The notes: generated from the letters alone by a model not told the origin. 64,000 nt of DNA from Haliotis rubra (GCF_003918875.1 NW_025767053.1:434001-498000); one strand, 5' to 3'; positions 35,115 to 60,145 are shown, counted from the first letter of the stretch. A program made the numbers and translations.

Positions 35115-35142
35115 ATGGCAGGAAGGATTGTACTTGCGTTAG
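35115..35142 (+). CDS. RTK exon 1, start of signal peptide (MAGRIVLAL)
   Basis: gcgATGG Kozak-like context. Donor TTAG|gtgagt is phase 1 and in frame with exon 2. Confidence 0.75.
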
Positions 35143-37258
35143 GTGAGTCAGCTCTGATTTGTTATAACAGTTCAAGTCATTAAATATATCAATTGAAATA
35201 TATATTTCCAGATAATGTAACATTTCACTATAGTTGTACGTGTACTATTCCTTTAATCGCCAGCGCCTGAGAGACTGGAATCTAAGGCGTGATATGAACT
35301 TGGTACGGAAGATTTATGCTTTTAACGGAATTAAATGTATTTCTGTGTTGTCATGGATTCATAAAGTTAATGTTCCACACTGGTTACATACACACATACA
35401 ACATAAGGGAGAAGGTGTCCAAGGTTGGAAGAGGGTAATCAATAATATTTACTTCTTGTGAATGACATAGAAGGACAACCCAATCTTTACACAACCATTT
35501 TTTTTTACCCAAGGGATATACATATCCATACAACATTTGACCCAATTCATTCTCAAATAGGTTAACTCAACGTATAGAACAGATATATATGTGTGTGTGC
35601 TGGCATGGTGTGTACATTCAGTGTGGGTAGTAATGTGACACCACTCAGGAGCACTAACAACGTGGGACATGCTGCTACCTGCTAACCATACATTGGGACA
35701 TCACATCCACTCAGTCACATCTTTAATATTTATGGCCAACGGGACTAATAAACAACAAGACTGCAGTACAGCTATATACCTGTCCCCTTCCTGCACCCCC
35801 TCCCAGCCCCGCATCCCGTTGTTACCACCCCTGTATTCACCTTGCTGGTGGTGGTAACAGTCCCATGTCCCTGAGTCATCGCCTATATATACATGTATAA
35901 CCAACAATGAACTGAGTAAATTGTCAGCTATTATTCTTTTGCAACAACATGGTGTACTCTAAGTACGAAGAAGATGAATCTGAATAGAAAAATCTTTTAA
36001 ATACGTTTATTAAAGATGCAACGAAACAAATACTAAAACGTGAAAATTATATTTTCGCAATTACAAGGACTAACATATCAATGAAGAAGGCTTTATCTCG
36101 TGCATGAATCATGTGACGTGAACGTTTCAGGAAGTAACGTGAGGAGGTGAACATGGTGTTAGAATGTGAATTATTACATGTCGGTCATGCTCTGAAGTAC
36201 CTGTATTTGAGTAGACCCGGCCTACATCGTACCTGTACAATCTGTACAGGTAAAATATTTGCAATGTAGCTTGTAGGGCAAAAGAAATAGGCACCTTGAA
36301 AAACCTTGATATCATTTTGTTTTTTTAAGCGTCCTCTGAACAGGTAATACATTTATTCATTCATTCATCAGTAAGGTACATGTAGCAACGGTAATTTGTG
36401 TGACTTTTGTAAAAATGTAGATACCTTAACACATGCTTTTTATATTACCTGGCTTTGGACGTGGTCTAAAATATTCTCATTATTAATTCACTTAATAATT
36501 TTAGGAATACTGAATTGTATGATATCATTGAAGAAAACTACAAATCGACATTTCTGCTTTACTTGTCAGGTACATATAATATTTTATTAGATGAGGTACA
36601 TGGAAGTGACTGTTATTTTCATATGCTAAGGACACATTTGTTTTGTGGCAACTATTTATTATTATCACCAATTAATCCTATGCTCAACAGTCAATAAATG
36701 GTATTGTATTTTCTGTCAACGCGGAAACAACATACCCTGTTACGTCCACGTGGTATTGGAAAAGGTTCTACAAAGTCATTACCGAACATCGTGAAAATGC
36801 GACGCACGAGTGCCTTAAACCATCCTGTCCACATGACCTGTTGTGAAATACTCTTTGATACAATGCGTGTAACATCACCCATGACGCCCGTATCAAATAC
36901 ATCGCCGCCGAGGAAACATAGCTTATTTGTTTAATTCGCCACCAATATGAGCGTCACGGCAAAAATCACTTGATATATTAGGAGGTGTATGCATAAGCAC
37001 GTTTGACCTGAACTTTAAAACCCTTCAGATTTGTAGTATATCACTTTAGTTTCAAGTGTCATCTGAAATCACCAAACCATTATTCAGATAGCGAAAATTG
37101 TCTAGCTGTGCTGTATCGCGACAGAACAGTATGAACGTCTCTATATTTGGTTTGACTCTTGTTTTACGTCCTACGTTGTTCCAGACAAACCAGTGGTTGA
37201 TATAATGAGTGTAATGGCGTGCAGTCAGCGTCTCTACTAAGTCTGATCACCTGATAAA

Positions 37259-37506
37259 CCCGTGAAGGTCCGGGTTAGAATTGATCTTCAGTAACCCATG
37301 CTTGTTTGTAAGAGGCGACTAACGGGATCGGATGGTCAGACTCGCTGACTCGGTTGACACATGTCATAGGTTCCCAATTGCGCAGATCGATGTTCATGCC
37401 GTTGATCACTGGATTGTCTGGTCCAGTCTCGATTATTTACAGACAGCCGCCATATAGCTATAACATTACTGAGTGTGGTGTAAAACAAAACTCACTCACT
37501 CACTCA
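37259..37506 (+). mobile_element. SINE-like family 2, full length, with 13-bp TSD CTGATCACCTGAT
   Basis: TSD at 37243..37255 and 37507..37519. Confidence 0.88.
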
Positions 37507-39687
37507 CTGATCACCTGATCACGACAAGATGCTGTTTGTGTTGAGATCTACAGTGTGTTCAGCTACTATTTCACCATATCTGGAAGTACGCGTAATAATT
37601 GGGCCACGGTCGCAGTGATAATATACAGGCTCGTTTTTTGTTCACTTTGAATAAGAGTTAAGAGAGATTGACAATCGAATTTCTACTTATAGTCGACAGT
37701 AGAGCATTACGATTTATTGATACTAGACCGTATATGATATACAGAGGACCATGCATCTGTTGTAAATAATCACGGGCAGGAACTCGTCTTCAAAGATATT
37801 ATAGTCTGTTTGCAGTGAAAACGTACCGATGAATTTCACTCTAAACAAAAAAGTAAATCGCTTGAAGCGAAATTAAGATTGCGAATCCTCATAATTTTAC
37901 CTTGCCAATTGAACATTCAAATCTCATAATGTTATTCAACTGAGGATAAAAGTTGTTTAACAAACGATCATAGTTTCAAATCGATATTATTGGTTTGTAT
38001 TACAAGGGGGTATGCACATTAGATGAAACACCGAGAACAAGTAGGGCTGGTCTAAGTTAATGCTCATCACGTACAGCACGTGCATTTGTTTCACTGTTCC
38101 ATCTACTGCGCTTACCCCCTTGTAATGGCCTCGAGTCAAGGCTTGAGTGCTGCGGCGTAAAACGACGTCAGTATGAAGCAAATGCATATGAATGGTGTCA
38201 CTGGGTATAAAGCACGAAGTCGTCTTGCATGATCTGCCTAGTGATGTTAATATATTTCTATCCCGATCACAGAATACACTCGCTAGTCCTCACATGAACT
38301 TATGAAAGCATGTATCCATGACCACGTGATTACGTCATATGGAGTGTAGGTGAATGTTTCCCACACAGCGGATGTGAGACTGCTTGGGGGTGACGGCAGC
38401 TGCCTCCTGACACCTGCCCCGGGGGTGGGGACTGAACACTTCCTACATGTTCCGCTGACCTACTTGTGCACCTCATTAACTCCGTCACCTGACACAGAGT
38501 AAATTAACACGCAATGTGTAGAGCAAAAACTTGGATTGAGGTAAATGAAACAGAAATGGTTATGATACTGTCCCATACGTGCCTTGAAGTTAAGAAAGCA
38601 AAATCTCAGTCTTGCGCTGTTGCCTCTTGATCTCACTGTAGGCATAACAACACAATCAAAACCAAGCAAAACAAAACAAAACTAACACCCCAAAAAAACA
38701 AACAAAACAAAAAACAAAACAAAAAACCAACAACCCAAAATACAACCCCCCAAGCAAACAAAACATTCGGTAAGCACATTTCAGCCACCGTAAACGTCTT
38801 GATAGGTATTCATAATAAAGGTTTCAACATGATCTGTGACACTATTGCACTACCAGAAATATGGTGGGTAGGTGCAAAAAAGCCAGTTAAGACACATATC
38901 AGCTGAATTCAACGATATCCTTAGCATGTGTTTATGAGTAACCATCAAATAGTGATCGTACACGACACAAGAAATGACAACATGATACACAATCGATTTG
39001 AAAACAAAACAAAACAATAACCATCTTTGAACTGTTGTCTTACACTTACATCTTCACAGAAACTGATGGACCAAAGAAAGTATACAATCATGTTGGGTGG
39101 CGGAAAAACTAAATTTCAAACAAATATCAAATGGTTATACCATGCTTATTTGGTCGACACAAACTTGTATTTAGAATATTCATTTTACAGCAATTCCGAA
39201 GGTTGTAACAAATTGATAACCCGTGTATTCTGTTGGTAAATCCGACATTTTTGTATAAATTATTTTGCCCGGCAGAGTTCTTGTATATGAATGTTAGTTT
39301 GCATCTAACAATTGCTGCCTTCATCACCTACGACTTGACACAAATGTATTATTTTTTTCTACGATTGCTTCCAAACACAATCTCTACTATTTGCAATGAC
39401 AATCTCCATTCTGATAAAATGGAATATGTTGTGCGACTGTTAGTTTCAATATTTGACTGGTGGATGCTTTCTTCAACTAAAGTTGTATATGACCTTGTGT
39501 TAGTCCGACGAGGCAGTACTTCTTGAAAACAAATTCGGTTTCCAGATTGTGTATACTTTTCTGCAACTATTTGCTCGTATTTCTAGCACAACTATTCATA
39601 AAACATGAAACAATTCTAGGTGTCTGTTTACACGAATGTGTAGGAATTGACATCATCGAAACATGACATGGGCTTTATACTCCTTGA

Positions 39688-39952
39688 CCTGTGAAGATCT
39701 GGGGTAGAATTGGTCTCCAGCAACCCATTCTTGTCATAAAAGGCGACTATGCTTGTCGTAAAAGGCGACTAATGGGATCGGGTGGTCTGGCTCGCTGACT
39801 TGGTTGACACATGTCATCGGTTCCCAATTGCGCAGATCGATGCTCATGCTGTTGATCACTGGAATGTCTGGTCCAGACTTGATTATTTACAGACCGCCGC
39901 CATATAGCTGGAATATTGCTGAGTGCGGCGTAAAACTAAACTCACACACTCA
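39688..39952 (+). mobile_element. SINE-like family 2, full length, with 13-bp TSD CTTTATACTCCTT
   Basis: TSD at 39673..39685 and 39953..39965. Confidence 0.88.
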
Positions 39953-41504
39953 CTTTATACTCCTTCATCATCATACATACAACAAAAAGATGTTGTCATT
40001 AGAAAATGTATCACAAACTGTTGTAGGAACTAAATATAATTATAAGAATGATTTGAATCATTTGTAACGAAATTTGCATAACCTCTCATCTGAGTGTTAT
40101 GTTCTGGTCAGGTAAATATTCGGTCTTGGTCATTCTTGCGATTTTGTCGGGATCGAACAGTGAGCTTGGTGGAAATATGTTTTATGATTATTGAAATGCT
40201 TTGTCGCGTTTTTTACAAATATCACATGAAAAATGTGACGCTGATAGATATGGAGTTCATGTAAATAATATAGTGTTCATTTAGTACATAACCACAATCA
40301 ACACGAACATGTCCCTAATAACTACGTCCACGTCAGCTCGGGCAATGTTAGGTGTACGGAGGAAACGTGTGACGATACGGTCACGGTTTGGGAGCGCGTT
40401 TCAAAACATTTTACGTCAATATAAAATAGACGCCAACACCGGAGAAAACACGTCTAGGGTATCGGCCGAAACATTTCCATTGTCGTAAAAGGCAAATGTG
40501 GTGATTAAATTGACAGTACACTAAAAACAGATGTTCCTTAAAGAGAAAACTTCACGTATTTCCAATGAAACATCAATTATGATGACGTTGCTCGGGGCCA
40601 CGACACCACCAGCAGAAATATCACCTGTATGTACCCATACAAACCTCTCATGACGAGGGTCTTTAAAACCAATAATTAATAAACGGTTGTGATAAAATAT
40701 CAATTGTCACAGAGTCTTAAATCCGAGATACGTGATATACATGAATGTGTGATAATAGTGACTGATAACAAATCTCCGTGTCTGTCCAACTGTAATTACC
40801 GCAGTCCATTAGCAGCAAGGTACCTGTCGCGAGTGGGTAAATAGTTAACACTTTATCAATATTACAATGTCCACATACAAGCTCGCACTGAGGTCTGGAC
40901 TGGTAGAGACGGGTAGATTTAGCAGAAAAATGAAAAAAGAAAACAGGAGCGAGCACGGGCAAATGATTCCGCTTACGTCACGTGTTGTATTACAGAAATA
41001 CACATACATGTATCGACGCTCGCCTACACGCACAGTACGAATGTACAATTACCTGTATAGATCAACATTAGATACTTGGGGATTTTGAGGATTGTGGGCA
41101 AGGCCTTCTGTCAACATTCGGTTAGGTTGAAGGTATTCTATTTACAAAGACTGTTCACTGTCAGCCAGGGGAGCGGGATTTGAATACAAAATCTACGTTT
41201 TGTGGACGTTACTGTGTTCTGTCACCCGAAACCCGTGTAATCAATACAGCCCATGCAAGTCTATATTAGCTAGCAAAGTGACTAAACTGTAGAAGGAAAT
41301 GAAGCGAGTTTCTGTGCTGCTTCAAATGATATTTTTTTTGCGATTTAATAACTGCCTTTTTCTCCTTTTTTGATAGTTTAGAAACTGGGTGACAGTCTAG
41401 AAGGGATCTTGGGATGGAACATTTAGGATTTTTAGAACCTACATCCACACTCTTGCTTCGGTGTCGTGTCCTTGTAGTAAGACAATGCTAAGACAAGTAA
41501 TGCG

Positions 41505-42710
41505 TTTTGTTTGTTTGTTGTTTAACGCCGCATTCAGCAATATTTCCAGCTATATGACGGCGGTCTGTAAATGATCGAGCCTGAACCAGGCAATCCAATG
41601 ATCAACAGCATGAGCATCAATCTACGCAATTGAGATACGATGGCATGTGACAACCAGGTCAGCGTGTCTGACCACCAGATCCTGTTAGTCGCCAACAAAG
41701 CATGGGTTGCTGAAGACCAGTTCTAGCCCGGTGCGTCACTGGGGATGCAAGCATGGGTTGCTGAAGATCAGTTCTAGCCCGGTGCGTCACTGGGGATGCA
41801 AGCATGGGTTGCTGAAGATCAGTTCTAGCCCGGTGCGTCACTGGGGATGCAAGCATGGGTTGCTGAAGATCAGTTCTAGCCCGGTACGTCACTGGGGATG
41901 CAAGCATGGGTTGCTGAAGACCAGTTCTAGCCCGGTGCGTCAATGGGGATGCAAGCATGGGTTGCTGAAGATCAGTTCTAGCCCGGTGCGTCAATGGGGA
42001 TGCGAGCATGGGTTGCTGAAGACCAGTTCTAGCCCGGTGCGTCACTGGGGATGCAAGCATGGGTTGCTGAAGATCAGTTCTAGCCCGGTGCGTCACTGGG
42101 GATGCAAGCATGGGTTGCTGAAGATCAGTTCTAGCCCGGTGCGTCACTGGGGATGCAAGCATGGGTTGCTGAAGATCAGTTCTAGCCCGGTACGTCACTG
42201 GGGATGCAAGCATGGGTTGCTGAAGACCAGTTCTAGCCCGGTGCGTCAATGGGGATGCAAGCATGGGTTGCTGAAGACCAGTTCTAGCCCGGTGCGTCAA
42301 TGGGGATGCAAGCATGGGTTGCTGAAGATCAGTTCTAGCCCGGTGCGTCAATGGGGATGCAAGCATGGGTTGCTGAAGATCAGTTCTAGCCCGGTACGTC
42401 ACTGGGGATGCAAGCATGGGTTGCTGAAGATCAGTTCTAGCCCGGTACGTCACTGGTGATGCGAGCATGGGTTGCTGAAGACCAGTTCTAGCCCGGTGCG
42501 TCACTGGGGATGCAAGCATGGGTTGCTGAAGACCAGTTCTAGCCCGGTGCGTCACTGGGGATGCAAGCATGGGTTGGTGAAGATCAGTTCTAGCCCGGTG
42601 CGTCACTGGGGATGCAAGCATGGGTTGGTGAAGATCAGTTCTAGCCCGGTGCGTCACTGGTGATGCGAGCATCGGTTGCTGAAGACCAGTTCTAACCCGG
42701 AGCTTCACGG
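41505..42710 (-). mobile_element. SINE-like family 2 whose 5' region is expanded into a 51-bp tandem array
   Basis: Body at 41505..41700, array follows, and the true 5' end TTCTAACCCGGAGCTTCACGG lies at 42690..42710. Confidence 0.85.
41698..42700 (+). repeat. Tandem array, 51-bp unit x ~20
   Basis: AAGCATGGGTTGCTGAAGATCAGTTCTAGCCCGGTGCGTCACTGGGGATGC. Confidence 0.95.
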
Positions 42711-43228
42711 ATCCACAAGTAATGTGAGGTGGTGATCATGGATGACACCACTGGGAAATGGTCCCCATTTGTTTCTTAGCAAGAGTGGCACAGCCGATGA
42801 CTATGTAACTTCATACAGAAACTGATATTTTGCATGTGTATTGGAGTGACAACAGTTCGAACCCAGCTTCACATGAATTTTACAAATGTCACAATTTAAA
42901 TTCGAGTTCGAGACAAGACGGTTGCCGATGTATGAATCGTTGTTGTTTTTTTTGTCTCGAACGTTGGACAGTGCACGATTACGTTATATATACTGGCTCC
43001 ATACTGCATGTTTTTACAACCTATCAAGCGTACCAGCGATCGTTTCATTATGCCCATGCGAAGCTTATATCACGTGATCTTTACTCTCAGGCCCTTCAAC
43101 TACTTGCTTGTTAAAGCACCAAGTGGTGGGTGAATAGGAACTTGTGAGGTCACGTGTTACTTTAGGTCTTCCAGTTTTAGGATATTGCTCTATGGTGTCC
43201 TTTATCACAAAGTTCGAATCTCTTTCAG

Positions 43229-43383
43229 TGTGTCTGTTCAGCGTTGTCAGCGTTGGTTCAGCAGGATTCCCCTCGGACGCCAGCGTGACCATCGCCCCGT
43301 ATGGCTCAGTACAGACACCGACTGCTGGACAGGACTTCGTGCTCAAGTGTTTTATAGACCACGGTCTTTTCGAGTATGTTGAG
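43229..43383 (+). CDS. RTK exon 2: signal peptide end plus Ig1 N-part (VCLFSVVSVGSAGFPSDASVTIAPYGSVQTPTAGQDFVLKCFIDHGLFEYVE)
   Basis: Acceptor tctctttcag|, donor GAG|gtgaga. Ig B-strand motif GQDFVLKC. Confidence 0.85.
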
Positions 43384-43399
43384 GTGAGACGGACACCTG

Positions 43400-45085: not shown

Positions 45086-45524
45086 TATAGCTTCTACCTG
45101 CAACTGGCTTATTAAACGACATAATCTTCAATCCATATCCGTCAAGTCGGACAAAAACATGTCTGCACTGCCAATACGTGTCGAATCATGGTCACACAAT
45201 ATCTACACTATGCATGTTTGTTATTGATTAAGCAATAATTAAGTTACAACACTTAGGCTAGTAAATAATTGATTCTGGATCATCATGGGTGAATGATATT
45301 GTTTTACGCCGTTTTAGCACTGCTCTCGTAATATCACGACAGGCGATATCATTAGGACCTTTACGCATTGTGTCCATGTTGGGAATCGAACCCGGAAGCG
45401 AATACTTTGTCCACTAGGCTACCGAGCAGCCCCGGATCGCCATGTGGGCGAGTGTACAAACAGGTCATACGATAAGAAAAGTTCCCCAGCCATGATCGTG
45501 TGTGACATGCGTGTGTAATTCTAG

Positions 45525-45671
45525 GTATTCTGGATGAGGAAATCGGAACGGGGCAGGGGGAATCTGGAGCCCATATTCCCGCCTGGGACAGGCTCAGACA
45601 GCACAACTCAGATCACTCCCGGTGTCACCAAATACAGCAAGCGGTCAGGCTCTAGTTCCCCAGGAAAACAG
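45525..45671 (+). CDS. RTK exon 3: Ig1 middle (VFWMRKSERGRGNLEPIFPPGTGSDSTTQITPGVTKYSKRSGSSSPGKQ)
   Basis: Acceptor ttctag|, donor CAG|gtgaca. 147 nt, phase 0/0, carries the Ig Trp. Confidence 0.75.
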
Positions 45672-46055: not shown

Positions 46056-46096
<41 letters not shown>

Positions 46097-46364: not shown

Positions 46365-46476
46365 TACTCTTTCCTCACGATACATTCTCTGACCTACAAA
46401 GATGATGGTGACTACGTTTGCGGTTTCTTCAGAGGCAAATACAACTTGAGCGGCATCTACGAGATGAACGTGGAAG
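46365..46476 (+). CDS. RTK exon 4: Ig1 C-part (YSFLTIHSLTYKDDGDYVCGFFRGKYNLSGIYEMNVE)
   Basis: Acceptor ttttag|, donor G|gtgggt. Contains LxI and DxGxYxC Ig motifs. Confidence 0.9.
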
Positions 46477-47285: not shown

Positions 47286-47436
47286 GTGGGCCAAATATAT
47301 CTTCAATGGTCACGGAGAAAAATGGCATTGTGGGATACCATGAACTGATCAAAGTGGAGTACATCGCCCGACCCCCCCTCGACAGCGTCACGTGGTATGG
47401 TCCATCGGGAGACGTACTCGACACCAACACATCCAG
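47286..47436 (+). CDS. RTK exon 5: Ig2 N-part, no Cys (GGPNISSMVTEKNGIVGYHELIKVEYIARPPLDSVTWYGPSGDVLDTNTSR)
   Basis: Acceptor gttccag|, donor AG|gtcagg. Phase 1 to 2. Confidence 0.85.
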
Positions 47437-48005: not shown

Positions 48006-48151
48006 GGTGTACATCAAGGAGTCGCAGCAGAGTGATGCGAGGGGGTTGGTAATCCTACACATCACCAACTTCTCTCGTGACGACAAGGGGGTGTACAGCG
48101 TCGTTCTCAGCAACGACGTGGGAGATGACAATGTGGAGTTCGAGTTCCATG
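48006..48151 (+). CDS. RTK exon 6: Ig2 C-part (VYIKESQQSDARGLVILHITNFSRDDKGVYSVVLSNDVGDDNVEFEFH)
   Basis: Acceptor tgtctaag|, donor G|gtaagc. DxGxY motif with Val in place of Cys. Confidence 0.85.
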
Positions 48152-48559: not shown

Positions 48560-48663
48560 CGGACCCCTTCCTGGAGGTCGTAACCCCCAACTCCACCACG
48601 TTCCCCCACGGCTCCACTGCAGTGTTCATCTGTAGGGCCACCAACTTCAGGAGCCAGCCCATG
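48560..48663 (+). CDS. RTK exon 7: Ig3 N-part (ADPFLEVVTPNSTTFPHGSTAVFICRATNFRSQPM)
   Basis: Acceptor gttgcag|, donor ATG|gtaagt. Confidence 0.85.
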
Positions 48664-48690
48664 GTAAGTACATGACAATATGGACCGATA

Positions 48691-50273: not shown

Positions 50274-50493
50274 TTCATGTGGCACCATGGTTGGGCGAAG
50301 AAAGATTTGCTGGAAATGCCTGCTACCAGAAGCGTAACCTTGGCAACAGAGAAAAGCATGACCAGCAATGTGACCACGTGGATGTCGACGGTGACGATCC
50401 GAGGCGTCAACTACAAATTTATTGGCGTCATTGAGTGTGCAGCGTCCGAACTCGGGGAGGTGTACGCCGATAGCAACACCATCAACGTTATTG
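50274..50493 (+). CDS. RTK exon 8: Ig3 C-part (FMWHHGWAKK...STVTIRGVNYKFIGVIECAASELGEVYADSNTINVI)
   Basis: Acceptor ccattag|, donor G|gtacgt. Contains the Trp and second Cys of the Ig fold. Confidence 0.85.
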
Positions 50494-51407: not shown

Positions 51408-51431
51408 TATATCGCCATGTCTGTGTTCTAG

Positions 51432-51582
51432 GGTCGCCGATGATCCAGTCCAGCATGAGGTCTGTGCTGGCGCAGTTGGGGGAGACGGTGGAGTTGCAGT
51501 GTAACGTGTCGTCCAACCCGCCCCCCACACAACTGCAGTGGCTGTTCAACAGGAACACGGTCAAGTTCCAGAAGTTTGCCGC
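51432..51582 (+). CDS. RTK exon 9: Ig4 N-part (GSPMIQSSMRSVLAQLGETVELQCNVSSNPPPTQLQWLFNRNTVKFQKFA)
   Basis: Acceptor gttctag|, donor GC|gtgggt. I-set pattern G-x-T-V-x-L-x-C...NPPP...W. Confidence 0.9.
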
Positions 51583-52057: not shown

Positions 52058-52191
52058 CAATTGGACATCGCGAGACGTCACTATGGAAATGAAACATGTG
52101 GTGGAAGTGACAACAACAGAAGACTTTGGAATCTACATGTGTCAGGTGACCAACATGTACGGCACCAATGGCTACAGTATCCACCTCATCG
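52058..52191 (+). CDS. RTK exon 10: Ig4 C-part (NWTSRDVTMEMKHVVEVTTTEDFGIYMCQVTNMYGTNGYSIHLI)
   Basis: Acceptor ttttacag|, donor G|gtaaga. Motif DFGIYMC...N..G. Confidence 0.9.
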
Positions 52192-52199
52192 GTAAGAAC

Positions 52200-53600
52200 A
52201 TCTGCTACCTTCATGTAGTTCACAGCGGTGAGATTACCTAGCCCCTGACTGTAATCCATGCATACACAGGGGATCACCATTATGTACTTGTAGTTCATGC
52301 ATACGTGGGTGTGAATATCTAGTACCTTCCTGTAGTTCATGCATGTATAGATAAGAACACCTCGTACCTTCCTGCAGTTCATGCATACGTGGGTGTGAAT
52401 ATCTAGTACCTTCCTGCAGTTCATGTATGTATAGATAAGAACACCTCGTACCTTCCGGCACTTCATGCATACGTGGGAGTGAATATCTAGTACCTTCCTG
52501 CAGTTCATGTATGTATAGATAAGAACACCTCGTACCTTCCTGCAGTTCATGCATACGTGGGTGTGAATATCTAGTACCTTCCTGTAGTTCATGCATACAT
52601 CGGGGAGCACACAGTACTTTTCTGTAGTTCATGCATACATCGGGGAGCACACAGTACTTTTCTGTAGTTCATGCATACATCGGGGAGCACACAGTACCTT
52701 CCTGCACTTCATGGATACATCGGGGAGCACGCAGTACCTTCCTGCACTTCATGCATACATTGGTGAGAACATTTAGTGCCTTCCTGCAGTTCATGCATAC
52801 ATAGATAAGCACACCTGGGACCTACCTGTAGTTCATGCATACATTGGAGGAGCACATTGCACAATATCTAGTACCTTCCTGCAGTTCATGTATGTATAGA
52901 TAAGAACGCCTCGTACCTTCCTGCAGTTCATGCATTCGCGGGTGTGAATATCTAGTACCTTCCTGTAGTTCACAGCGGTGGGAGTGCCTAGCCCCTGTCT
53001 GTAGTTCATGTATACATCGGGGAGCACGCAGTACCTTCCTGTAGTTCATGCATACATCGGGGAGCACGCAGTACCTTCCTGTAGTTCATGGATACATCGG
53101 GGAGCACACAGTACCTTCCTGCACTTCATGGATACATCGGGGAGCACACAGTACCTTCCTGCACTTCATGGATACATCGGGGAGCACGCAGTACCTTCCT
53201 GTAGTTCATGCATACATCGGGGAGCACACAGTACTTTTCTGTAGTTCATGCATACATCGGGGAGCACACAGTACCTTCCTGCACTTCATGGATACATCGG
53301 GGAGCACGCAGTACCTTCCTGCACTTCATGCATACATTGGTGAGAACATTTAGTACCTTCCAGCAGTTCATGCATACATAGATAAGCACACCTGGGACCT
53401 ACCTGTAGTTCATGCATACATTGGAGGAGCACATTGCACATCGATGTAGTTTACTCATACATCCGCGAGAGCACTAAGTACCTTCCTCTAATGCATGCAT
53501 ACATTAGAGGAGAACATTGCACATCCATATAGTTTACTCATACATCGGCGAGAGCCTTAAGTACCTTCCTCTAATGCATGCATACATCAGTGGGAACATA
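52200..53600 (+). repeat. Compound ~40-bp tandem array filling RTK intron 10
   Basis: AGTACCTTCCTGTAGTTCATGCATACATCGGGGAGCACAC and alternating variants. Confidence 0.9.
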
Positions 53601-53660
53601 TAGCACCTTCCAGTGGGAACATATAGCTCTCAACCCTTGTGTGTATTACCGATGTTGCAG

Positions 53661-53780
53661 GGGCCATGTACAACTGGTGCAGGGGCAGATTGTGCCCCAA
53701 GGACAAGCTCTGTGACGAGGAAAACATCGTCTGCGTGTGTCCACAGGGATATGCCGAGAACAAGGAGGGCGTCTGTAAAG
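53661..53780 (+). CDS. RTK exon 11: EGF-like domain (GAMYNWCRGRLCPKDKLCDEENIVCVCPQGYAENKEGVCK)
   Basis: Phase 1-1 exon with six Cys and the CxC-PxGY-x6-C pattern. Confidence 0.9.
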
Positions 53781-54436
53781 GTGACTCCAGTATTAGGGCC
53801 AACACATACGTTGGTGTTATAGAGCGCCCAGAGCGGTGAACGTGAGGTCGGGCTCAGCTGTCTATTGGCCACAGTGCCCTGACGTGTCCGGACATTGGAA
53901 CAGAGCTGTCTGGATATAGCTGTTAGATTGCTGACTGCGGTTTAAAATAAGATTGACTCACACAGCCGGTATGTGTCAATCGACCATGGTTTGTCCAGAC
54001 GAAGGTGTAGAGCTGTCCTAATATAGCTATGACGCAAGTTACCGACTGCGTTAAACACCACTGACCCACCCACCGGTGTGTGTCCCGAACAGTCGATGTG
54101 GACGATGACGTAAAATGGTTAGCTTTAGGTCTGCGTTCTCTTCTCCACTTCGAGCCCCTGCCTCTGTGTGGTAGGCATGTTAAAAGTTGGGTAAATATCT
54201 TCTCATTCACTGTTGGCGAACTGGCCCAATCAGAGTCTGGGTTTTGTGCAGCCGCCAGACCGAAGCCTAAAGGACAATGGTGGTACGTCCTTCTATGGTA
54301 ACGTCACAATATGAGCGTATCAAGACATAACATCGTGCTACTAAAATGATTTCATGTCCAAAAGATTAACCACCTCATTAGTTGTAGTTAAGGACAACTG
54401 AACAATGTGTATAGAATTCTGTACTTTGTATTCCAG

Positions 54437-54564
54437 ACTCTGCGCCACCGACACAGGCAGTGGAGACGTACGTGTGGGCGGCCGTGGGCGCCAGCAGCTT
54501 GCTCGTGGTCATCTTGGCCATAGGCAGCATCCTGTATATGTGCTGGAAGAGACGGAACAACCTG
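54437..54564 (+). CDS. RTK exon 12: transmembrane helix (DSAPPTQAVETYVWAAVGASSLLVVILAIGSILYMCWKRRNNL)
   Basis: Acceptor ttccag|, donor CTG|gtcagt. About 23 hydrophobic residues followed by a KRR stop-transfer. Confidence 0.9.
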
Positions 54565-54651
54565 GTCAGTACCCGGCATTTGTAATTCCCTCACGACCTT
54601 TCAGGTAAAATGAGCATTAACGACCTGTTCAGTATGTTAGCGCATATATAG

Positions 54652-54883
54652 TGGTTGGTTGGTTTGTTGTTAAACGCCACACTCAGCAATGTTACATCTA
54701 TATGGCGGCGGTCTGTAAATAATCGAGTCTGGACCTGACAATCCAGTGATCAACAGCAAGAGCATCGATCTACGCAATTGGGACACGATGACATATGCCA
54801 ACCAAGTCAGTGAGCCCGACCCCGTTAGTCGTCTCTTACAAGCCTTGGTTACCGAAGACCAATTGTAACCCGGACCTTCACAG
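54652..54883 (-). mobile_element. SINE-like family 2 in RTK intron 12
   Basis: Matches the family consensus. Confidence 0.85.
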
Positions 54884-55288
54884 GCATGTAAATAGTGACG
54901 TGCATGCAGGCGCGTGCGGCTGCTCGTGCAACCAAAGGACGCATGTCTGTTTGCCGACTATCTGTAGCAAACAAAGATACAATGCCGCAGTTAGACATGG
55001 ACACCAAGCACAGACACATTACCCTAAGCAGACCAATTCTTGTTTTACACATCCCCACGAGATTTAGCATCCACAAACAAAGACAAAGCAATGTATACGC
55101 CTGGCCCAATTATTAACATGCTTTGTACTGACACCATTTGGCTTGTCACGGTATAGCTTGTGTGGTTCAAACAGTTCCAGAATGTTGGATATTAGAAATC
55201 GGGAATCCCCCCCCCCCCTTTTCTATAACGTCTGTCACAATTTTCATTACACAAACGTGAACATAACATCATTTCTTTTTGTTTCCAG

Positions 55289-55354
55289 CTCAAACAGAAA
55301 CAAGTCAGGTCGGACAGATTCGCACTTACCAACGCAGTATACTCCCACGCTCAG
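55289..55354 (+). CDS. RTK exon 13: juxtamembrane (LKQKQVRSDRFALTNAVYSHAQ)
   Basis: Strong polypyrimidine acceptor, donor CAG|gtaggc. 66 nt, phase 0/0. Confidence 0.75.
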
Positions 55355-55746
55355 GTAGGCACAACCAGTTTTTGACCGAGTTCCTGTCTACTTTAACGAG
55401 GAGACAAGAAGTGGCCGCGATTGGACAACCTAATAAGAAGCATACATTAGTCTTCGGTATCGAATGAAATCATAAATATTTGGGACTCAATGAAATGTAA
55501 ACTAAATATCTTCACTAATGAACACATTATAAGTTTATTGCACAAAACGTTCGGATGTCTGGTGTGGACGTCTTCATGTGTATTTGGATTAATTATGAAT
55601 GACGATACGCATGTGCACTTGTGGCCGGCTGGACGGGCGTGGTAGACGCCTGCAGCACATTTTACAACGAGTCTTACATGGAATCAGCCATCGTGTTATT
55701 TCTTATATTCTGACGTTATAATACATACTGTCAACTTCCTCCCTAG

Positions 55747-55924
55747 TATGCCACTTCTAACATCTATGAGATTATCACGAGACCCAGTGACGAGTTCCCG
55801 CGGGAACGCCTGAGATTTCTCCACGCACTTGGAGTCGGCAAGTTTGGCCGGGTAATGAAGGCGGAAGCTCTTAGCATCAACCGCACAGGATCCTGGGAAG
55901 ATGTAGCAGTCAAAATGTGTCAAG
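55747..55924 (+). CDS. RTK exon 14: kinase subdomains I-II (YATSNIYEII...EFPRERLRFLHALGVGKFGRVMKAEA...VAVKMCQ)
   Basis: GxGxFG and VAVK motifs, canonical splice sites. Confidence 0.95.
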
Positions 55925-56903
55925 GTCAGTTTAAAAAAAAATGCATCAAAGATGATACGTGTCTATGTGAACATTCGCCAGTAAACATCGCAAATTGTAA
56001 ATTCTCAGTACGAGCGAGCGAAGCATTAACAGTAGCCTTTTTATGTCCCTATCAAGGAAACTAATACTGTTCTCCAAATGGAAAGTAAAACCAACAATGT
56101 CATATATGGTTTTGATATCCCATACACGCTGTCAGTACAGCCACAAGTTGTTAGATCTTGTTTATCTGTAATGGCTTTATTTTGTTAATATTTAAATGTT
56201 AGGATGAGGTGAAAAATATATAAAAACTCCCTCTGCATGAACGCAAAAACCCGTCCATCTTCCATTCAGTTTTAGGCGTGTTTGTCACGTAGTGACAAGA
56301 TATTTCGCCATTTCGTCACGGGGAGGTGATTAATACCTGCGTCTAAACATCTGAGTTGTATGGATCGTTGTACCTACGAAACAGATTTCTGTTCACAATG
56401 AAGCCTGATATTGTTTGGATATATTTTTCGTACGTAGCTTTATCTCTGTCATGAATGTATGAGCCTTGGTTAGGAATTAGTAGTAGTAAGAGGACTCAAA
56501 GGATGCTATAAGAATGCCAGGTATATTGCGCCTATCTGTACGTTAATATATCAAAATATATAACATTATCAGTTTTCCTTCCCTCCAACGTTCTGTACTA
56601 CACGAAAATAGACACATCTGATTGCATTAATGACAATAGTAAAACACTGACAGGAACCAGTCTTTGTGTCAAGACGTGAAAAATGTATATTTTCTCTTCG
56701 GGCTAAATGTGTGTTTCGAAGCCTCTTGGAAATATGTTTTTATTTTTTATTGTTTGAATTTTGGTTGAAATAATATTTACGTGTTACAATATACCGAAGA
56801 TAGGGAATAACGTCGGAAGTCGATACGTTTCTGTACTGGAGTTTCTTTATCTAACTACCGAACCACGTACTGGCATTGACTCGTTTGTCCTCGCTGTTCC
56901 CAG

Positions 56904-57014
56904 AGTCTGCCACAGATCTGGACAAAGAGGATCTGTACAATGAGCTGATGATCATCAGGAAAATCCCCAAACACATCAACGTCGTCAGCTTCTACGGCGC
57001 CTGCACATACGGAG
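56904..57014 (+). CDS. RTK exon 15: alphaC helix and subdomain IV (ESATDLDKEDLYNELMIIRKIPKHINVVSFYGACTYG)
   Basis: Conserved Glu and HxNVV...GACT, canonical splice sites. Confidence 0.95.
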
Positions 57015-57687
57015 GTAGGTCGTCCTTGTGTGGTGTTCGTGTGACGTTTGTGAATGCGAGACAGTGAATGTCATCAATGAGGTGGGTGGCCTAGGTCAGA
57101 CATCACAGTGGCTGATAGTATGAATAACGATCTTCGAAAGCAGCAACACCAGCTGCCACATGAGATACACCGTGTAATATTCTAGTCGCCACTGCCGATA
57201 CGTCTACGATACATTCGACCACATGGGTCTGATGCGGCCGTTGACCCACTCCGACCTTCTGCTCACTTGGAAGACGCTCTATCCACTGCATGATCCTTCA
57301 CAGTGTCACGACAGTTCTTTTGTCCAAGAGTCTCCTCGTGGTAATACACCAAGGCACCTTACAACCCCATATTAGGAAATGTGCAGTAGCCAGTTAAACA
57401 TGCATCCCTGCTTTTCAGAGAGACCAAGAAGCATTTGTTTTGTCTGATAGCAATTCGATATTTACATACTTGACAGTTCCGGGATATAAAGATGACTCCT
57501 GTCTTTGAACGAAAGAGTTATCTTTCAATGATCTGTATCAGGGTAGTTGCTCATTAGTTTGAGGCAGATTTCTCAATGGTGGACTTCTGATAAGGTACAA
57601 CATTGGTCTGAAGGTGTGTTTGTTTATCGTTCTGCAGTTAGCAATATTCCATCCATATGACAGCTGTGATCGAACCTGGAGTAAACA

Positions 57688-57836
57688 GGGGCGGTGGGGT
57701 AGCCTAGTGGTTAAGGCACTCGCTCGTCACGCCTAAGACCCCGGGTTCGAATCCCCACATGGGTACATTGTGTGAAGCCCATTTCTGGTGTCCCCCGCCG
57801 TGATATTGCTGGAATATTGCTAAAAGCGGCGTAAAA
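57688..57836 (+). mobile_element. SINE family 1, intact, with 12-bp TSD CTGGAGTAAACA, inserted in a decayed family 2 copy
   Basis: A and B boxes present. TSD at 57676..57687 and 57837..57848. Confidence 0.9.
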
Positions 57837-57950
57837 CTGGAGTAAACAATCAATAATTGACGTTTTAAGCATGGATCTAGGCAATTATCTTTGTGTGTGC
57901 ATACAGTGGGCTAATGGCTATGTACACGTGTAAAACGTCTTGCGTTACAG

Positions 57951-58178
57951 AGCCTCTCCTTCTCATCTTGGAGTATGTCCCTGGCGGGGATCTGCGCAAC
58001 TACCTGCGCAGACGCCGACCTGCCTACGACAAGACATGGGAGAGTCCAGTCAGTGTACATGAGAGCCCCCCTAGCTTTGGAGGAAGTGTCCAAAGATGAT
58101 GGAGAGCTGACGGCCAAAGATCTACTGTCCTTTGCTTTACAGACAGCCAGAGGAATGCAGCACCTTGAAGCCAACAGC
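57951..58178 (+). CDS. RTK exon 16: hinge, short kinase insert and alphaE; contains a +1 frameshift
   Basis: EPLLLILEYVPGGDLRNYLRRRR is in one frame and LTAKDLLSFALQTARGMQHLEANS in another. The exon is 228 nt where 227 is needed. There is a C6 run at 58066..58071. Confidence 0.9.
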
Positions 58179-58396
58179 GTATGTGTCAGAGTGTATATGA
58201 AATACAGAAATATGTTTAATCAGAGAATATACATAATCAGAGAATCTGCATAACTATTACCCAATATATTAACCGCTGGTTCGGGAAGACTTAACGGAAT
58301 TGATTTCTTTGGCTGACTGCGGCGTAAAACACCCCCTACACCATAGTTTGACGACAGTGTTACTGATTTTTTGCTTGTTATGCATCGTGGTTACAG

Positions 58397-58631
58397 ATCG
58401 TACATCGTGACGTCGCTGCCAGGAACGTCTTGGTCGGATACAACTGTGTGTGCAAGATCTCGGACTTTGGTCTCGCGAGAGATGTAGAGGGCGTGGACGT
58501 GTACGAGAGGACGTCCAAGGGGCCGCTCCCAGTCAGGTGGATGCCCCCTGAAGCTTTGATGGAGGGGTTCCACAGTCACAAAGCGGACGTGTGGTCCTTC
58601 GGGGTCTTACTGTGGGAGATCGTTACACTAG
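58397..58631 (+). CDS. RTK exon 17: catalytic loop, activation loop and P+1 loop
   Basis: [13 protein letters not shown]...[10 protein letters not shown]...[18 protein letters not shown]...[16 protein letters not shown]. Confidence 0.97.
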
Positions 58632-58784
58632 GTAGTCAAATATTTCATTCATAATTCCTTGATTGCATAGTGCTCGATATTACATATTGATCATTTTAGA
58701 AATTTGAGTTCGGTGTTTGATAATAGGTGATCCACACAAAGAACTGTTCTTCGTTAATGTCATAACGTGTACCTTTTAATCCAC

Positions 58785-59025
58785 AGGTGAAAATCCGGGT
58801 TAGCATTGCTTTTCGGCAACCCATGATGCTTGTCTTAAGAGGCGACTAACGGGATCGGGTCGTCAGGCTCGCTGACTTTGTTGACACGTCATGGCATCCC
58901 AGGTGCTTAGATGGATGTAAATGCTGTCGTTCACCGGATTGTCTGGTCCAGATTCGATTATTAACACACCGTCGCAATACAGCTGAAATATTGCTGAGTG
59001 CGGTGTTAAATAAAGACAAACAAAC
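58785..59025 (+). mobile_element. SINE-like family 2 in RTK intron 17
   Basis: Matches the family consensus. Confidence 0.85.
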
Positions 59026-59047
59026 TAATGTTTTAATCCAACATCCC

Positions 59048-59187
59048 NNNNNNNNNNNNNNNNNNNNNNNNNNNNNNNNNNNNNNNNNNNNNNNNNNNNN
59101 NNNNNNNNNNNNNNNNNNNNNNNNNNNNNNNNNNNNNNNNNNNNNNNNNNNNNNNNNNNNNNNNNNNNNNNNNNNNNNNNNNNNNNN
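59048..59187. other. Assembly gap (140 N)
   Basis: Run of N in intron 17. The protein is continuous across it. Confidence 1.
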
Positions 59188-59217
59188 CCAGTCACTCACT
59201 GATGTATCTCTGTGTAG

Positions 59218-59314
59218 GAGCCAGTCCCTACTCCACGATGACACTGCGAGGGGTCATTGACGCCGTTGTTGCTGGGAAACGTCTGGAGCGACCTCAGTAC
59301 TGCATGGACGAACT
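59218..59314 (+). CDS. RTK exon 18 (GASPYSTMTLRGVIDAVVAGKRLERPQYCMDEL)
   Basis: Acceptor tgtgtag|, donor CT|gtaagt. Tyr-kinase pattern GxxPY...GxRLxxP..C. Confidence 0.92.
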
Positions 59315-59967
59315 GTAAGTGTGAAGCCAATTCCGGTGTTTGCTATCAGTTGGATTCTGTAGGAATATACACAAATCACGTCAGTATAGAAGGGATCTTA
59401 TCGGGATTCTGATCCAGTACCCAGTACCCCCAGTACCCCCAAATTTCTACAAACCTACAGAAAAAGGGGATATATTTGTCTGATTACATATCATGGCGTA
59501 CATGTTCACCTGCAAGTAGGATGAATGCGAGGACATGACATGAGAATTCCGCGGCAGAATTTGTTTGTCTTGTTCCGGAGTATACAGGACTACCGTGGGG
59601 TAGGTGTACAAATAAAATATCTCTCACTCACTGCCCACTACCATGTAGCCTACCCACCATGGTAGATGAGAACTTAAATATAGCATAGCAAGATGCGATC
59701 TGCTTGGGGAACTTCGTTGCAAATGAAGAACAAGTTAATTTGTTTACCGTTAAAACAATGGGATTCACTTTGAAAATACCGCCTCGGGCTCAAGATAATT
59801 TGAAATGTGAACGAATGTGGAATTGTGCTCATAGTGTGTGGCCCAGTTTGCGCATATAGTGCCCATCAATACCCATCACCCTTGAGACGTGAATAGACTG
59901 AGCCAGTCATCAATATTCATCGGTGGCGGCAGGAATTTACACTGATTTCACAATTTATGTTGCCCAG

Positions 59968-60145
59968 GTACTCGCTGATGAGCAAGTGTTGGGAACATCA
60001 GCCTCAAGACCGGCCCTGCTTCAAAGAGCTCGTGCAGCACGTGGAGTACCTGCTTGAGAAGGAGGCGGACTACATACAGCTCGACCAGTTCCAAGAGGCA
60101 GTGTACATGGTGTTGGAGCCCGATTCCCAGGACGAGAAGCTATAA
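59968..60145 (+). CDS. RTK exon 19, terminal (YSLMSKCWEHQPQDRPCFKEL...EADYIQLDQFQEAVYMVLEPDSQDEKL*)
   Basis: CW...RP.F subdomain XI motif followed by a TAA stop. Confidence 0.95.

What the first reader, a model, noticed from the sequence alone, without database searches (positions are those of the whole stretch)
35115..60145. Chimeric receptor tyrosine kinase: Ig x4 + EGF ectodomain on a Cad96Ca/Stitcher-like kinase
Seen: 19 phase-consistent exons give SP-Ig-Ig(no Cys)-Ig-Ig-EGF-TM-kinase. Established: FGFR has 3 Ig; PDGFR/VEGFR have 5-7 Ig; Tie has Ig+EGF+FN3; Ret and Cad96Ca have cadherin repeats. None has four Ig followed by one membrane-proximal EGF. Recalled from memory, not searched: EFPRxRLxF, ESATxxDxxDLxxEL, HINVV, YERxSxGxLPxRWM, WEIVTLG and a DYIxL...EKL tail are Cad96Ca/Stitcher (wound-response RTK) hallmarks. 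Inference: a lineage-specific, exon-shuffled RTK subfamily. The EGF module and each Ig module are bounded by phase-1 introns, as expected for shuffling.
Basis: partly seen in the sequence, partly recalled or inferred. Interest (0 to 1): 0.8.

Follow-up and report, generated by a model that had tools for sequence, protein, structure and literature searches.

The report
Abalone Ig-EGF receptor tyrosine kinase
This is a real, transcribed 19-exon abalone gene for a cell-surface receptor tyrosine kinase with four Ig domains and one EGF domain; it belongs to a mollusc-wide family that databases mislabel as "FGF receptor-like", although its kinase is closest to the insect wound-response receptor Cad96Ca.

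Summary
A 19-exon, + strand gene (35115-60145) with canonical AG/GT sites encodes an 895-aa protein: signal peptide, four Ig modules, one six-Cys EGF, TM, tyrosine kinase. Each Ig module and the EGF exon lie between phase-1 introns. Spliced RNA-like contigs join EGF, TM and kinase exons.

The N gap (59048-59187) lies in intron 17; no coding sequence is missing. The "exon-16 frameshift" is one extra C in a C6 run (58066-58071). RNA-like contigs are one base shorter in that exon, and three orthologs are in frame.

The window is Haliotis rubra. RefSeq calls this gene "FGFR 3-like" and truncates it at the frameshift (699 aa).

The kinase sits in a strongly supported mollusc-only clade (gastropods and bivalves). 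Grouping with FGFR or Ret is rejected (AU p 0.024, 0.019); grouping with Cad96Ca is not (p 0.43), but sisterhood is unresolved. Several "hallmark" motifs are shared with Ret or FGFR.

The architecture is not unique to this locus: about 30 molluscan proteins share it, under assorted automatic names. The oyster kinome paper listed Cad96Ca-like kinases as "TK-Unique". I found no paper describing the family.

Verdict: an undescribed, mis-annotated RTK subfamily of moderate interest.

The parts
35115..35142 (+). Exon 1: start codon and first nine residues of the signal peptide (MAGRIVLAL); phase-1 donor TAG|gtgagt
   Evidence: Matches the N-terminus of ortholog P0010 (MEGRTVLVL) and the RefSeq model P0152. 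Not covered by the reads I laid.
43229..43383 (+). Exon 2: rest of the signal peptide and first part of Ig1 (first Cys)
45525..45671 (+). Exon 3: Ig1 middle segment (long, low-confidence loop)
   Evidence: pLDDT is below 50 for residues 84-94.
46365..46476 (+). Exon 4: Ig1 C-terminal half (DGDYVC); ends in phase 1
47286..47436 (+). Exon 5: Ig2 N-terminal half; Val replaces the first Cys
48006..48151 (+). Exon 6: Ig2 C-terminal half; Val replaces the second Cys (GVYSVV)
48560..48663 (+). Exon 7: Ig3 N-terminal half
50274..50493 (+). Exon 8: Ig3 C-terminal half
51432..51582 (+). Exon 9: Ig4 N-terminal half
52058..52191 (+). Exon 10: Ig4 C-terminal half (best-scoring Ig; I-set/Ig_3)
53661..53780 (+). 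Exon 11: single six-Cys EGF-like module, 120 nt, phase 1 to phase 1
   Evidence: RNA contigs, splice sites, conserved six Cys in 16 of 21 family members. Pfam is only weak here (cEGF E=0.008).
54437..54564 (+). Exon 12: transmembrane helix and basic stop-transfer (CWKRRNN)
   Evidence: RNA contigs; predicted helix from residue 499.
55289..55354 (+). Exon 13: 66-nt juxtamembrane exon
   Evidence: 66 nt of the RNA contigs were unplaced, with contig depth in bin 55207-55389. It is the only 66-nt AG..GT open candidate. Matches the ortholog.
55747..55924 (+). Exon 14: juxtamembrane end, Gly-loop (GVGKFGRV) and VAVK
   Evidence: 100% identical to the ortholog.
56904..57014 (+). Exon 15: helix C region (ESATDLDKEDLYNEL)
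57951..58178 (+). Exon 16: hinge and kinase insert; contains the single frame break
58066..58071 (+). C6 homopolymer holding one base too many relative to the RNA contigs and the ortholog reading frames
   Evidence: best-scoring single-base removal falls anywhere in this run; 229 window nt against 228 contig nt.
58397..58631 (+). Exon 17: catalytic loop [11 protein letters not shown], activation loop [23 protein letters not shown]
   Evidence: PF07714 E=8e-33.
59048..59187 (.). Assembly gap (N x 140) inside intron 17, next to a SINE-like repeat.
59218..59314 (+). Exon 18: kinase C-lobe (ASPYSTM...)
59968..60145 (+). Exon 19: end of the kinase, C-terminal tail with two Tyr (DYIQL, AVYMV), stop codon

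Best explanation
The locus is one expressed Haliotis rubra gene for a single-pass receptor tyrosine kinase. Its parts are a signal peptide, four Ig domains (the second without its disulfide), one membrane-proximal EGF module, a TM helix, a short juxtamembrane segment, and a kinase with all catalytic motifs plus a Tyr-bearing tail.

It is one member of a mollusc-wide RTK family found in gastropods and bivalves. The family's kinase forms its own clade, outside FGFR and Ret, and is most similar to panarthropod Cad96Ca/Stitcher.

The single frame break is most likely a homopolymer error or a private allele of the reference assembly, not a dead gene.

Inferred mechanism: an unknown extracellular ligand binds the Ig array and brings two receptors together. 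The kinases then trans-phosphorylate the single activation-loop Tyr (DVYERTSKG), and the tail tyrosines recruit SH2 effectors. The anatomy, expression and phylogenetic placement are shown. The ligand, dimerisation and downstream partners are inferred from how RTKs in general work.
For: - Gene model: 19 canonical exons and phases.
- Transcription: spliced RNA-like contigs join EGF, TM, JM and kinase exons, with enough upstream length for the Ig exons.
- Orthologs: 893-895 aa in H. rufescens, H. cracherodii and H. asinina, 80-86% identical and all in frame.
- Kinase: colinear with the Pfam profile; P0010 scores E=1e-87 against PF07714. Catalytic motifs GxGxxG, VAVK, HRD, DFG are present.
- Ectodomain: four Ig folds, an EGF-sized module and a TM helix.
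- Family: Ig plus EGF_CA/cEGF plus kinase proteins in more than 20 mollusc genera.
- Trees: mollusc clade 97/98* and 99/91*; FGFR+Ret clade excludes it.
- AU tests: with FGFR p=0.024, with Ret p=0.019, with Cad96Ca p=0.43.
- Reciprocal similarity to cadherin-bearing Cad96Ca at 50-55% identity.
- Frame break sits in a C6 run, and the RNA contigs are one base shorter.
Against: - No listed run is on record as RNA. 'RNA-like' is inferred from the spliced contigs.
- The RNA and DNA contigs differ from the window by about 1% in exons and up to 7% in introns. They may come from another individual or a sister species, so they do not prove that the reference animal's allele is intact.
- The EGF module is below Pfam threshold in this protein.
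- AU groups were chosen after seeing a first tree.
- Tie, PVR and Torso kinases were not in the tree.
- No ligand or function is known.
Confidence: 0.8

Rival explanations
1. It is a genuine FGF receptor ortholog, as the RefSeq names ('fibroblast growth factor receptor 3-like/4-like') imply, that has gained an extra Ig and an EGF.
For: Solved structures rank FGFR2/3/1 kinases first (E about 1e-79). The Ig-rich ectodomain superficially resembles FGFR. Automatic names use FGFR.
Against: - A starred FGFR+Ret clade excludes the mollusc clade.
- The AU test rejects mollusc plus bilaterian FGFR (p=0.024).
- The activation loop has one Tyr (VYER), not the FGFR YYKK.
- The oyster has a separate true FGFR, 64.5% identical to human FGFR3 (PMC4883820 supplement).
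- From a scallop member, the best non-mollusc hits are Cad96Ca, not FGFR.
- The PDB holds no Cad96Ca, so its ranking is biased.
Confidence: 0.03
2. In H. rubra the gene is a recent pseudogene: the extra C is real, and the protein stops after residue 699 without a catalytic loop, as the RefSeq model P0152 shows.
For: The window sequence has C6 and an in-frame stop 10 codons later. The RefSeq model ends there. The contigs that repair the frame may come from another animal or species.
Against: - All 19 exons, including the three downstream of the break, keep open frames, canonical splice sites and 90-100% identity to orthologs.
- The break is a single base in a homopolymer, the classic assembly-error context.
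- Two RNA-like runs show the in-frame length.
- There are no other disabling changes.
Confidence: 0.12
3. The mollusc family is the direct co-ortholog of arthropod Cad96Ca/Stitcher. Its ancestral cadherin ectodomain was replaced by Ig4-EGF through phase-1 exon shuffling, so it may keep a Cad96Ca-like role such as epithelial wound response. This sharpens the best explanation rather than contradicting it.
For: - Cad96Ca kinases with a cadherin domain are the nearest non-mollusc relatives, at 50-55% identity.
- They share the 'VYER.S.G' activation loop and the 'E[KR].[DE][LF]..EL' motif.
- A mollusc plus Cad96Ca clade costs only 0.26 lnL (p=0.43) and was one side of a branch in one ML tree.
- No cadherin-bearing mollusc Cad96Ca appeared in any search.
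- All modules have phase 1-1 boundaries.
Against: - The backbone is unresolved (27/67; open).
- Ambulacrarian 'Cad96Ca-like' kinases with other ectodomains are equally close.
- Absence of a mollusc cadherin-type Cad96Ca rests on capped hit lists.
- Function cannot be transferred when the ligand-binding part differs.
Confidence: 0.4
4. The Ig/EGF exons and the kinase exons belong to two adjacent genes that were fused by prediction.
For: Exon 1 and the Ig exons were not directly covered by the reads I laid. Introns are long (8 kb for intron 1).
Against: - Single spliced contigs run EGF-TM-JM-kinase and carry 1.6 kb more upstream.
- The extracellular EGF exon and TM exon are on the same contig as the kinase.
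- Phases are continuous.
- Four species' models and about 30 family members have the same joined architecture.
Confidence: 0.02

Closest known systems
Cad96Ca / Stitcher (arthropod RTK; Drosophila wound-response and eye-patterning receptor)
   Same: It is the nearest non-mollusc kinase, at 50-55% identity from a scallop family member and about 46% from this gene. It shares the single-Tyr activation loop 'VYER.S.G..P[IV]RWM' and the helix-C motif. A common clade is not rejected. Both are single-pass RTKs with a short ectodomain-to-kinase linker.
   Different: The Cad96Ca ectodomain carries a cadherin repeat (PF00028 in many hits). This protein has four Ig and one EGF and no cadherin. The mollusc kinases form their own starred clade, separate from the panarthropod Cad96Ca clade. 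Orthology is not shown.
FGFR (vertebrate FGFR1-4, insect and cnidarian FGFRs)
   Same: Ig-domain ectodomain, TM and a tyrosine kinase of the same broad FGFR/Ret/Cad96Ca neighbourhood. FGFRs are the best PDB hits. This is the name RefSeq gives the gene.
   Different: FGFR has three Ig and no EGF, and a YYKK activation loop. The FGFR kinase clade excludes this family, and forced grouping is rejected. Molluscs have a separate true FGFR.
Ret
   Same: 43-46% kinase identity; shares EFPR and WEIVTLG-type motifs.
   Different: Ret has cadherin-like domains and a Cys-rich domain (PF22540 in hits). Its activation loop reads Y[LK]K...VPVKWM. Grouping is rejected (p=0.019). Molluscs have a separate Ret (Patella P0353; oyster).
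Tie1/Tie2
   Same: The only classical RTK family that combines Ig and EGF modules in its ectodomain.
   Different: Tie has Ig-Ig-EGFx3-Ig-FN3x3. Here the order is Ig x4 then one EGF next to the membrane, with no FN3. The Tie kinase was not among the best hits in any search and was not tested in my trees.
Oyster 'TK-Unique' kinases (Epelboin et al. 2016, PMC4883820, S1 table)
   Same: These are C. gigas tyrosine kinases whose best hits were Drosophila Cad96Ca (36-50%) or sea-urchin RETa, left unclassified. That is the same situation as this family. Oyster members of the family appear in my hit lists (Crassostrea, Ostrea, Saccostrea).
   Different: I did not match accession to accession. That paper gives no domain architecture or family description.

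Membership tests
Receptor tyrosine kinase (general) | N-terminal signal peptide, one TM helix, cytoplasmic tyrosine-kinase domain with Gly-loop, VAVK Lys, HRD..N and DFG | tested here: met
   Hydrophobic N-terminus and predicted helix 2-14; TM helix from residue 499. PF07714 is colinear over exons 14-19, and the ortholog scores E=1e-87. Motifs [21 protein letters not shown] and DFG are present.
Cad96Ca / Stitcher | Cadherin repeat in the ectodomain | tested here: not met
   Pfam finds only Ig-type and weak EGF-type domains in the ectodomain. Arthropod Cad96Ca hits carry PF00028.
Cad96Ca / Stitcher | Kinase domain inside the Cad96Ca clade | tested here: inconclusive
   The mollusc clade (99/91*) and the panarthropod Cad96Ca clade (98/88*) are separate, and the backbone is open. 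A joint clade is not rejected (p=0.43).
Cad96Ca / Stitcher | Single-Tyr activation loop of the type VYER(K/T)S.G.LP(I/V)RWM | tested here: met
   It is also present in some echinoderm and hemichordate kinases. 'RWM' alone also occurs in the InsR-like outgroup.
FGFR | Kinase domain inside the FGFR clade; YYKK activation loop | tested here: not met
   excluded by a starred branch; AU p=0.024; VYER, not YYKK.
FGFR | Ectodomain of two to three Ig domains with an acid box and no EGF | tested here: not met
   Four Ig plus a six-Cys EGF. The acid box was not specifically searched.
Ret | Cadherin-like domains plus Cys-rich domain; kinase inside the Ret clade | tested here: not met
   No such domains were found. 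The Ret clade (100/97*) excludes it. AU p=0.019.
Tie | Ig-EGFx3-Ig-FN3x3 ectodomain | tested here: not met
   No FN3, and a single EGF after the fourth Ig.
Tie | Kinase inside the Tie clade | not tested
   No Tie reference sequence was obtained. Tie did not appear among the best 60 PDB hits or the best 120 protein hits.
Mollusc Ig-EGF RTK family (unnamed; defined here) | Kinase in the mollusc-only clade; ectodomain of four Ig followed by one or two EGF modules next to the membrane | tested here: met
   Clade support 97/98* and 99/91*. Aligned Ig Cys pairs and six-Cys EGF occur in 16 of 21 members.

The most novel reading that the evidence does not exclude
Molluscs replaced the cadherin ectodomain of an ancestral Cad96Ca-type receptor with an Ig4-EGF cassette assembled from phase-1 modules. 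They then kept swapping ectodomains on the same kinase: TSP1 in two Haliotis paralogs, C-type lectin in Elysia, and EGF lost in unionid mussels. On this reading the family is an undescribed, mollusc-specific RTK radiation whose members may sense epithelial or shell damage as Stitcher does in flies.
Probability: 0.35. Interest if true: 0.55.

Novelty: new variant of a known kind. Interest (0 to 1): 0.4.

Why it matters
RTK families are usually treated as a closed list of about 20 types defined in vertebrates and flies.

Here a well-supported, mollusc-wide clade carries an ectodomain (Ig x4 plus a membrane-proximal EGF) not found in the classical families I compared (FGFR, Ret, Cad96Ca, Tie), on a kinase whose nearest relative is the little-studied Cad96Ca.

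It is consistently mislabelled FGFR-, VEGFR-, PDGFR- or Ret-like by annotation pipelines. Expression studies in abalone, oysters and scallops that report "FGFR" changes may therefore be reading a different receptor.

For H. rubra specifically, the public protein is truncated before the catalytic loop because of one base in a homopolymer.

The clean phase-1 module boundaries, and the TSP1- and lectin-bearing relatives inside the same kinase clade, make this a tidy natural example of ectodomain shuffling on a fixed signalling engine. The ligand and biological role are unknown.

Tried and rejected
- **Pfam on single exons.** It confirmed kinase colinearity but was too weak for the EGF and TM.
- **Slow exhaustive protein search.** It delivered the ortholog P0010, which made everything else possible. 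Many top rows were multi-kinase chimeric predictions and were ignored.
- **Whole-protein word search.** It returned mostly LIM kinases after the Haliotis orthologs and was uninformative. The region-restricted searches were the useful ones.
- **PDB ranking.** It puts FGFR first. I rejected this as evidence of family membership because the PDB has no Cad96Ca and the trees contradict it.
EFPR, WEIVTLG and HINVV are rejected as diagnostic. 'RWM' is rejected as a shared derived trait.
- **First Ig2 cysteine table.** It used columns one to three residues off and was redone.
- **Literature.** The oyster kinome main text, the holozoan tyrosine kinome paper and abalone FGFR papers contain no description of this family. 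The sea-urchin RTK survey was not held.
- **Scan notes.** Searching by words found nothing on other DNA.
- **Not attempted.** I did not fill or lay reads over the N gap. I did not lay reads on the Ig exons, because the single read-laying run went on EGF-to-kinase to test the frameshift and gene continuity.
- **Spliced model.** It was used only inside scripts, with XX at the frame break.

Full report
**What is in the sequence**

The window has one N run, at 59048-59187. On the + strand between 35.1 and 60.1 kb, stop-free blocks carry recognisable Ig halves, an EGF-like six-Cys block, a TM segment and kinase pieces.

The kinase pieces hit Pfam PF07714 in colinear order, at profile positions 2-36, 73-97, 122-199, 201-233 and 234-257.

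Using the largest kinase exon as bait, the exhaustive protein search returned P0010 (893 aa, 96% identical over the exon). Mapping P0010 back with tblastn and searching GT-AG boundaries gave a 19-exon model. Every exon has a canonical acceptor with a pyrimidine tract and a GT donor. The total is 895 codons.

Ig1 (exons 2-4), Ig2 (5-6), Ig3 (7-8), Ig4 (9-10) and EGF (exon 11, 120 nt) each start and end in phase 1.

**The gap and the frameshift**

Exon 17 ends 'CTAG|gtagtc' at 58631. Exon 18 begins 'tgtgtag|GAGCC' at 59218. Across the gap the Pfam profile is continuous (199 to 201), and the ortholog aligns ...WEIVTLG/ASPYSTM... with nothing missing.

The gap is therefore inside intron 17, beside a SINE-like repeat. 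I did not fill it or lay reads on it.

The only frame break is in exon 16, where frame 2 passes to frame 3 at a C6 run (58066-58071). Removing any one of those C's gives the best match to the ortholog.

**Transcription**

No listed run is recorded as RNA. Even so, runs X1 and X3 contain spliced contigs.

One 2,943-nt contig lies on 53660-53778, 54435-54563, 55745-55922, 56902-57012, 57949-58177 and 58397-58632. After shifting to the canonical AG/GT sites, these are exons 11, 12, 14, 15, 16 and 17. The 66 unplaced nucleotides equal exon 13 (55289-55354).

In exon 16 the contig has 228 nt against 229 in the window, which restores the frame.

The contig has about 1,598 nt upstream of the EGF exon, against 1,348 nt of upstream coding sequence in my model. 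It has about 280 nt downstream of exon 17, against 275 nt for exons 18-19.

So an extracellular exon, the TM exon and the kinase are on one transcript.

The contigs differ from the window by about 1% in exons. DNA-like contigs differ by up to 7% in introns. They may therefore come from another animal or a sister species.

**Organism and public annotation**

P0010 is XP_046329904.2, 'fibroblast growth factor receptor 3-like' of Haliotis rufescens. H. cracherodii has an 895-aa ortholog and H. asinina an 894-aa one. My model is 80.2%, 80.6% and 86.5% identical to them.

P0152, the H. rubra RefSeq protein 'FGFR 3-like', is 99.3% identical to my model over 699 aa. It ends at the stop reached after the frameshift. 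The window is therefore H. rubra, and its public protein lacks the catalytic loop and everything after it.

**Ectodomain**

Scanned module by module, each of the four segments gives an Ig-family hit. Ig4 is strong, Ig2 just passes the I-set threshold, and Ig1 and Ig3 are below threshold. The EGF segment gives only cEGF at E=0.008.

An AlphaFold model built on a 21-sequence family alignment has mean pLDDT 78.6. It shows four beta-sandwiches (about 28-144, 147-246, 250-350 and 355-450), a small three-stranded module at 466-490, and a helix from 499. Foldseek aligns 420-450 columns to tandem-Ig arrays such as titin, contactin, DCC, Robo, Sidekick Ig1-4, KIT and CSF-1R.

In the family alignment the six EGF cysteines are in register in 16 of 21 members. 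Several relatives score as EGF_CA, cEGF or FXa_inhibition.

In Ig2, all four Haliotis orthologs of this gene have Val at both cysteine positions. The paralogs and other genera keep Cys...Cys. The loss of that disulfide is specific to this orthogroup.

**Kinase affinity**

Similarity from this gene is ambiguous. Other mollusc proteins sit at 48-63%, and then Cad96Ca-like, Ret and FGFR all sit at 43-47%. The PDB ranks FGFR first, but it has no Cad96Ca.

- A careful ML tree of 71 kinase domains gives a mollusc-only clade (33 rows, 97/98*) and a separate clade of FGFR plus Ret plus cnidarian FGFR (97/91*). Cad96Ca-named arthropod clades and some ambulacrarian kinases form an unresolved grade.
- AU tests reject mollusc plus bilaterian FGFR (delta lnL 29.2, p=0.024) and mollusc plus Ret (30.8, p=0.019).
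- From a short-branched member (scallop P0262), the nearest non-mollusc kinases are almost all arthropod 'tyrosine kinase receptor Cad96Ca' at 50-55% identity. Many carry a cadherin domain, and they score level with gastropod members of the family. No hit in the best 120 carries a Ret name. The only 'FGFR' names are a 38%-identical amphioxus model and two arthropod rows that score among the Cad96Ca set.
- With 24 panarthropod Cad96Ca added, there are three starred clades: mollusc 99/91*, Cad96Ca 98/88*, FGFR+Ret 98/95*. The backbone is open.
- A mollusc plus Cad96Ca clade costs 0.26 lnL (p=0.43).

The kinase is therefore not FGFR and not Ret. It is compatible with being sister to Cad96Ca, but that is not demonstrated. 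The AU groups were defined after a first tree, and Tie, PVR and Torso were not sampled.

**Motifs**

EFPR occurs in Ret, cnidarian FGFR and fish FGFR. WEIVTLG occurs in Ret and cnidarian FGFR. HxNVV is general.

The activation loop does discriminate. The mollusc family and Cad96Ca have ...VYER(T/K)S.G.LP(I/V)RWM. Ret has ...Y(L/K)K...VPVKWM, and FGFR has ...YYKK...LPVKWM. 'RWM' is also in the insulin-receptor-like outgroup, so it is ancestral.

**Family and neighbourhood**

Members occur in these gastropods: Haliotis, Gigantopelta, Patella, Lottia, Pomacea, Batillaria, Babylonia, Littorina, Lymnaea, Elysia and Plakobranchus.

They occur in these bivalves: scallops, oysters, Pinctada, Mercenaria, Ruditapes, Mactra, Mya, Dreissena, unionids and Solemya.

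Bivalve and gastropod sequences form separate subclades. Haliotis has at least four paralog lineages.

One of them, P0258 (982 aa, Ig plus two EGF-type domains), is encoded by this same window. Its first exons lie on the minus strand at 2407-2246 and 116-3, so it sits head-to-head with this gene about 33 kb away.

Inside the mollusc kinase clade there are also proteins with a TSP1 ectodomain (Haliotis P0284, P0135) and a C-type lectin (Elysia P0084). This fits repeated ectodomain exchange.

No non-mollusc sequence fell in the clade. That absence rests on capped hit lists.

**Prior knowledge**

The Pacific oyster kinome paper lists kinases whose best hit is Drosophila Cad96Ca (36-50%) or sea-urchin RETa as 'TK/TK-Unique'. 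It lists a true FGFR (64.5% to human FGFR3) and a single Ret separately (PMC4883820 supplement).

A Drosophila RTK review lists Stitcher (Cad96Ca) without a human counterpart, with collagen as ligand and wound healing as function (PMC6982143).

I found no paper that describes an Ig4-EGF RTK family in molluscs. My library is limited to open-access text.

**Mechanism**

Shown:
- It is a single-pass receptor with a complete kinase: [24 protein letters not shown].
- It has one activation-loop Tyr and two tail tyrosines (DYIQL, AVYMV).

Inferred from RTKs in general:
- Ligand binding to the Ig array drives dimerisation.
- The kinases trans-phosphorylate the loop Tyr.
- SH2 effectors are recruited to the tail.

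The ligand cannot be carried over from Cad96Ca, because the ectodomain is different.

**Verdict**

This is a real, expressed gene of an undescribed but database-visible mollusc RTK subfamily. It is mis-named FGFR-like, and in H. rubra it is truncated in annotation by a one-base homopolymer discrepancy.

Noticed in passing
window 3-116 and 2246-2407, minus strand: First coding exons of a second, paralogous Ig+EGF receptor tyrosine kinase (P0258, 982 aa, about 37% identical overall). It lies head-to-head with the gene studied, about 33 kb away, and runs off the left edge of the window.
   Followed up: partly
window 57951-58178 (C6 run at 58066-58071): The public H. rubra RefSeq protein for this gene (P0152, 'FGFR 3-like', 699 aa) ends at the stop that follows the one-base frame break. 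The annotated protein therefore lacks the catalytic loop, the activation loop and the tail.
   Followed up: yes
window 43403-45086: 21-bp minisatellite, about 80 copies, directly after the exon 2 donor and inside intron 2. It creates a 616-codon open frame that is not coding in my model.
   Followed up: partly
window 41698-42708: 51-bp tandem repeat, about 20 copies at 96% identity, in intron 1. It gives long open frames on both strands.
   Followed up: no
window 52249-53504: 40/80-bp minisatellite, about 27 copies at 77% identity, filling most of intron 10 between Ig4 and the EGF exon.
   Followed up: no
window 48922-49290, minus strand: Remnant of a DDE_3 (Tc1/mariner-type) transposase ORF in intron 7 (PF13358, E=1e-7). 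An adjacent 114-aa ORF at 49427-49768 has no Pfam hit.
   Followed up: partly
window about 54660-54880, 57590-57950, 58690-59047; also 37312-37515, 39762-40064, 41534-41698: Copies of a very high-copy SINE-like element, with contig depth in the millions in DNA runs. One copy abuts the N gap, which may explain why the assembly broke there.
   Followed up: no
P0284, P0135 (Haliotis) and P0084 (Elysia): Proteins whose kinase nests inside the mollusc Ig-EGF clade but whose ectodomain carries a TSP1 repeat or a C-type lectin domain instead. Unionid members (Potamilus, Sinanodonta) lack the aligned EGF cysteines.
   Followed up: partly
P0355, P0139, P0140, P0150 (sea stars); P0071, P0103 (Ptychodera); P0130 (Holothuria): Ambulacrarian kinases with the same 'VYE(R/K).S..P(I/V)RWM' activation loop. 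They carry automatic names ranging from TYRO3-like to FGFR-like to Cad96Ca, and at least one has an Ig+FN3 ectodomain. They form separate clades on the Cad96Ca side of the tree.
   Followed up: no
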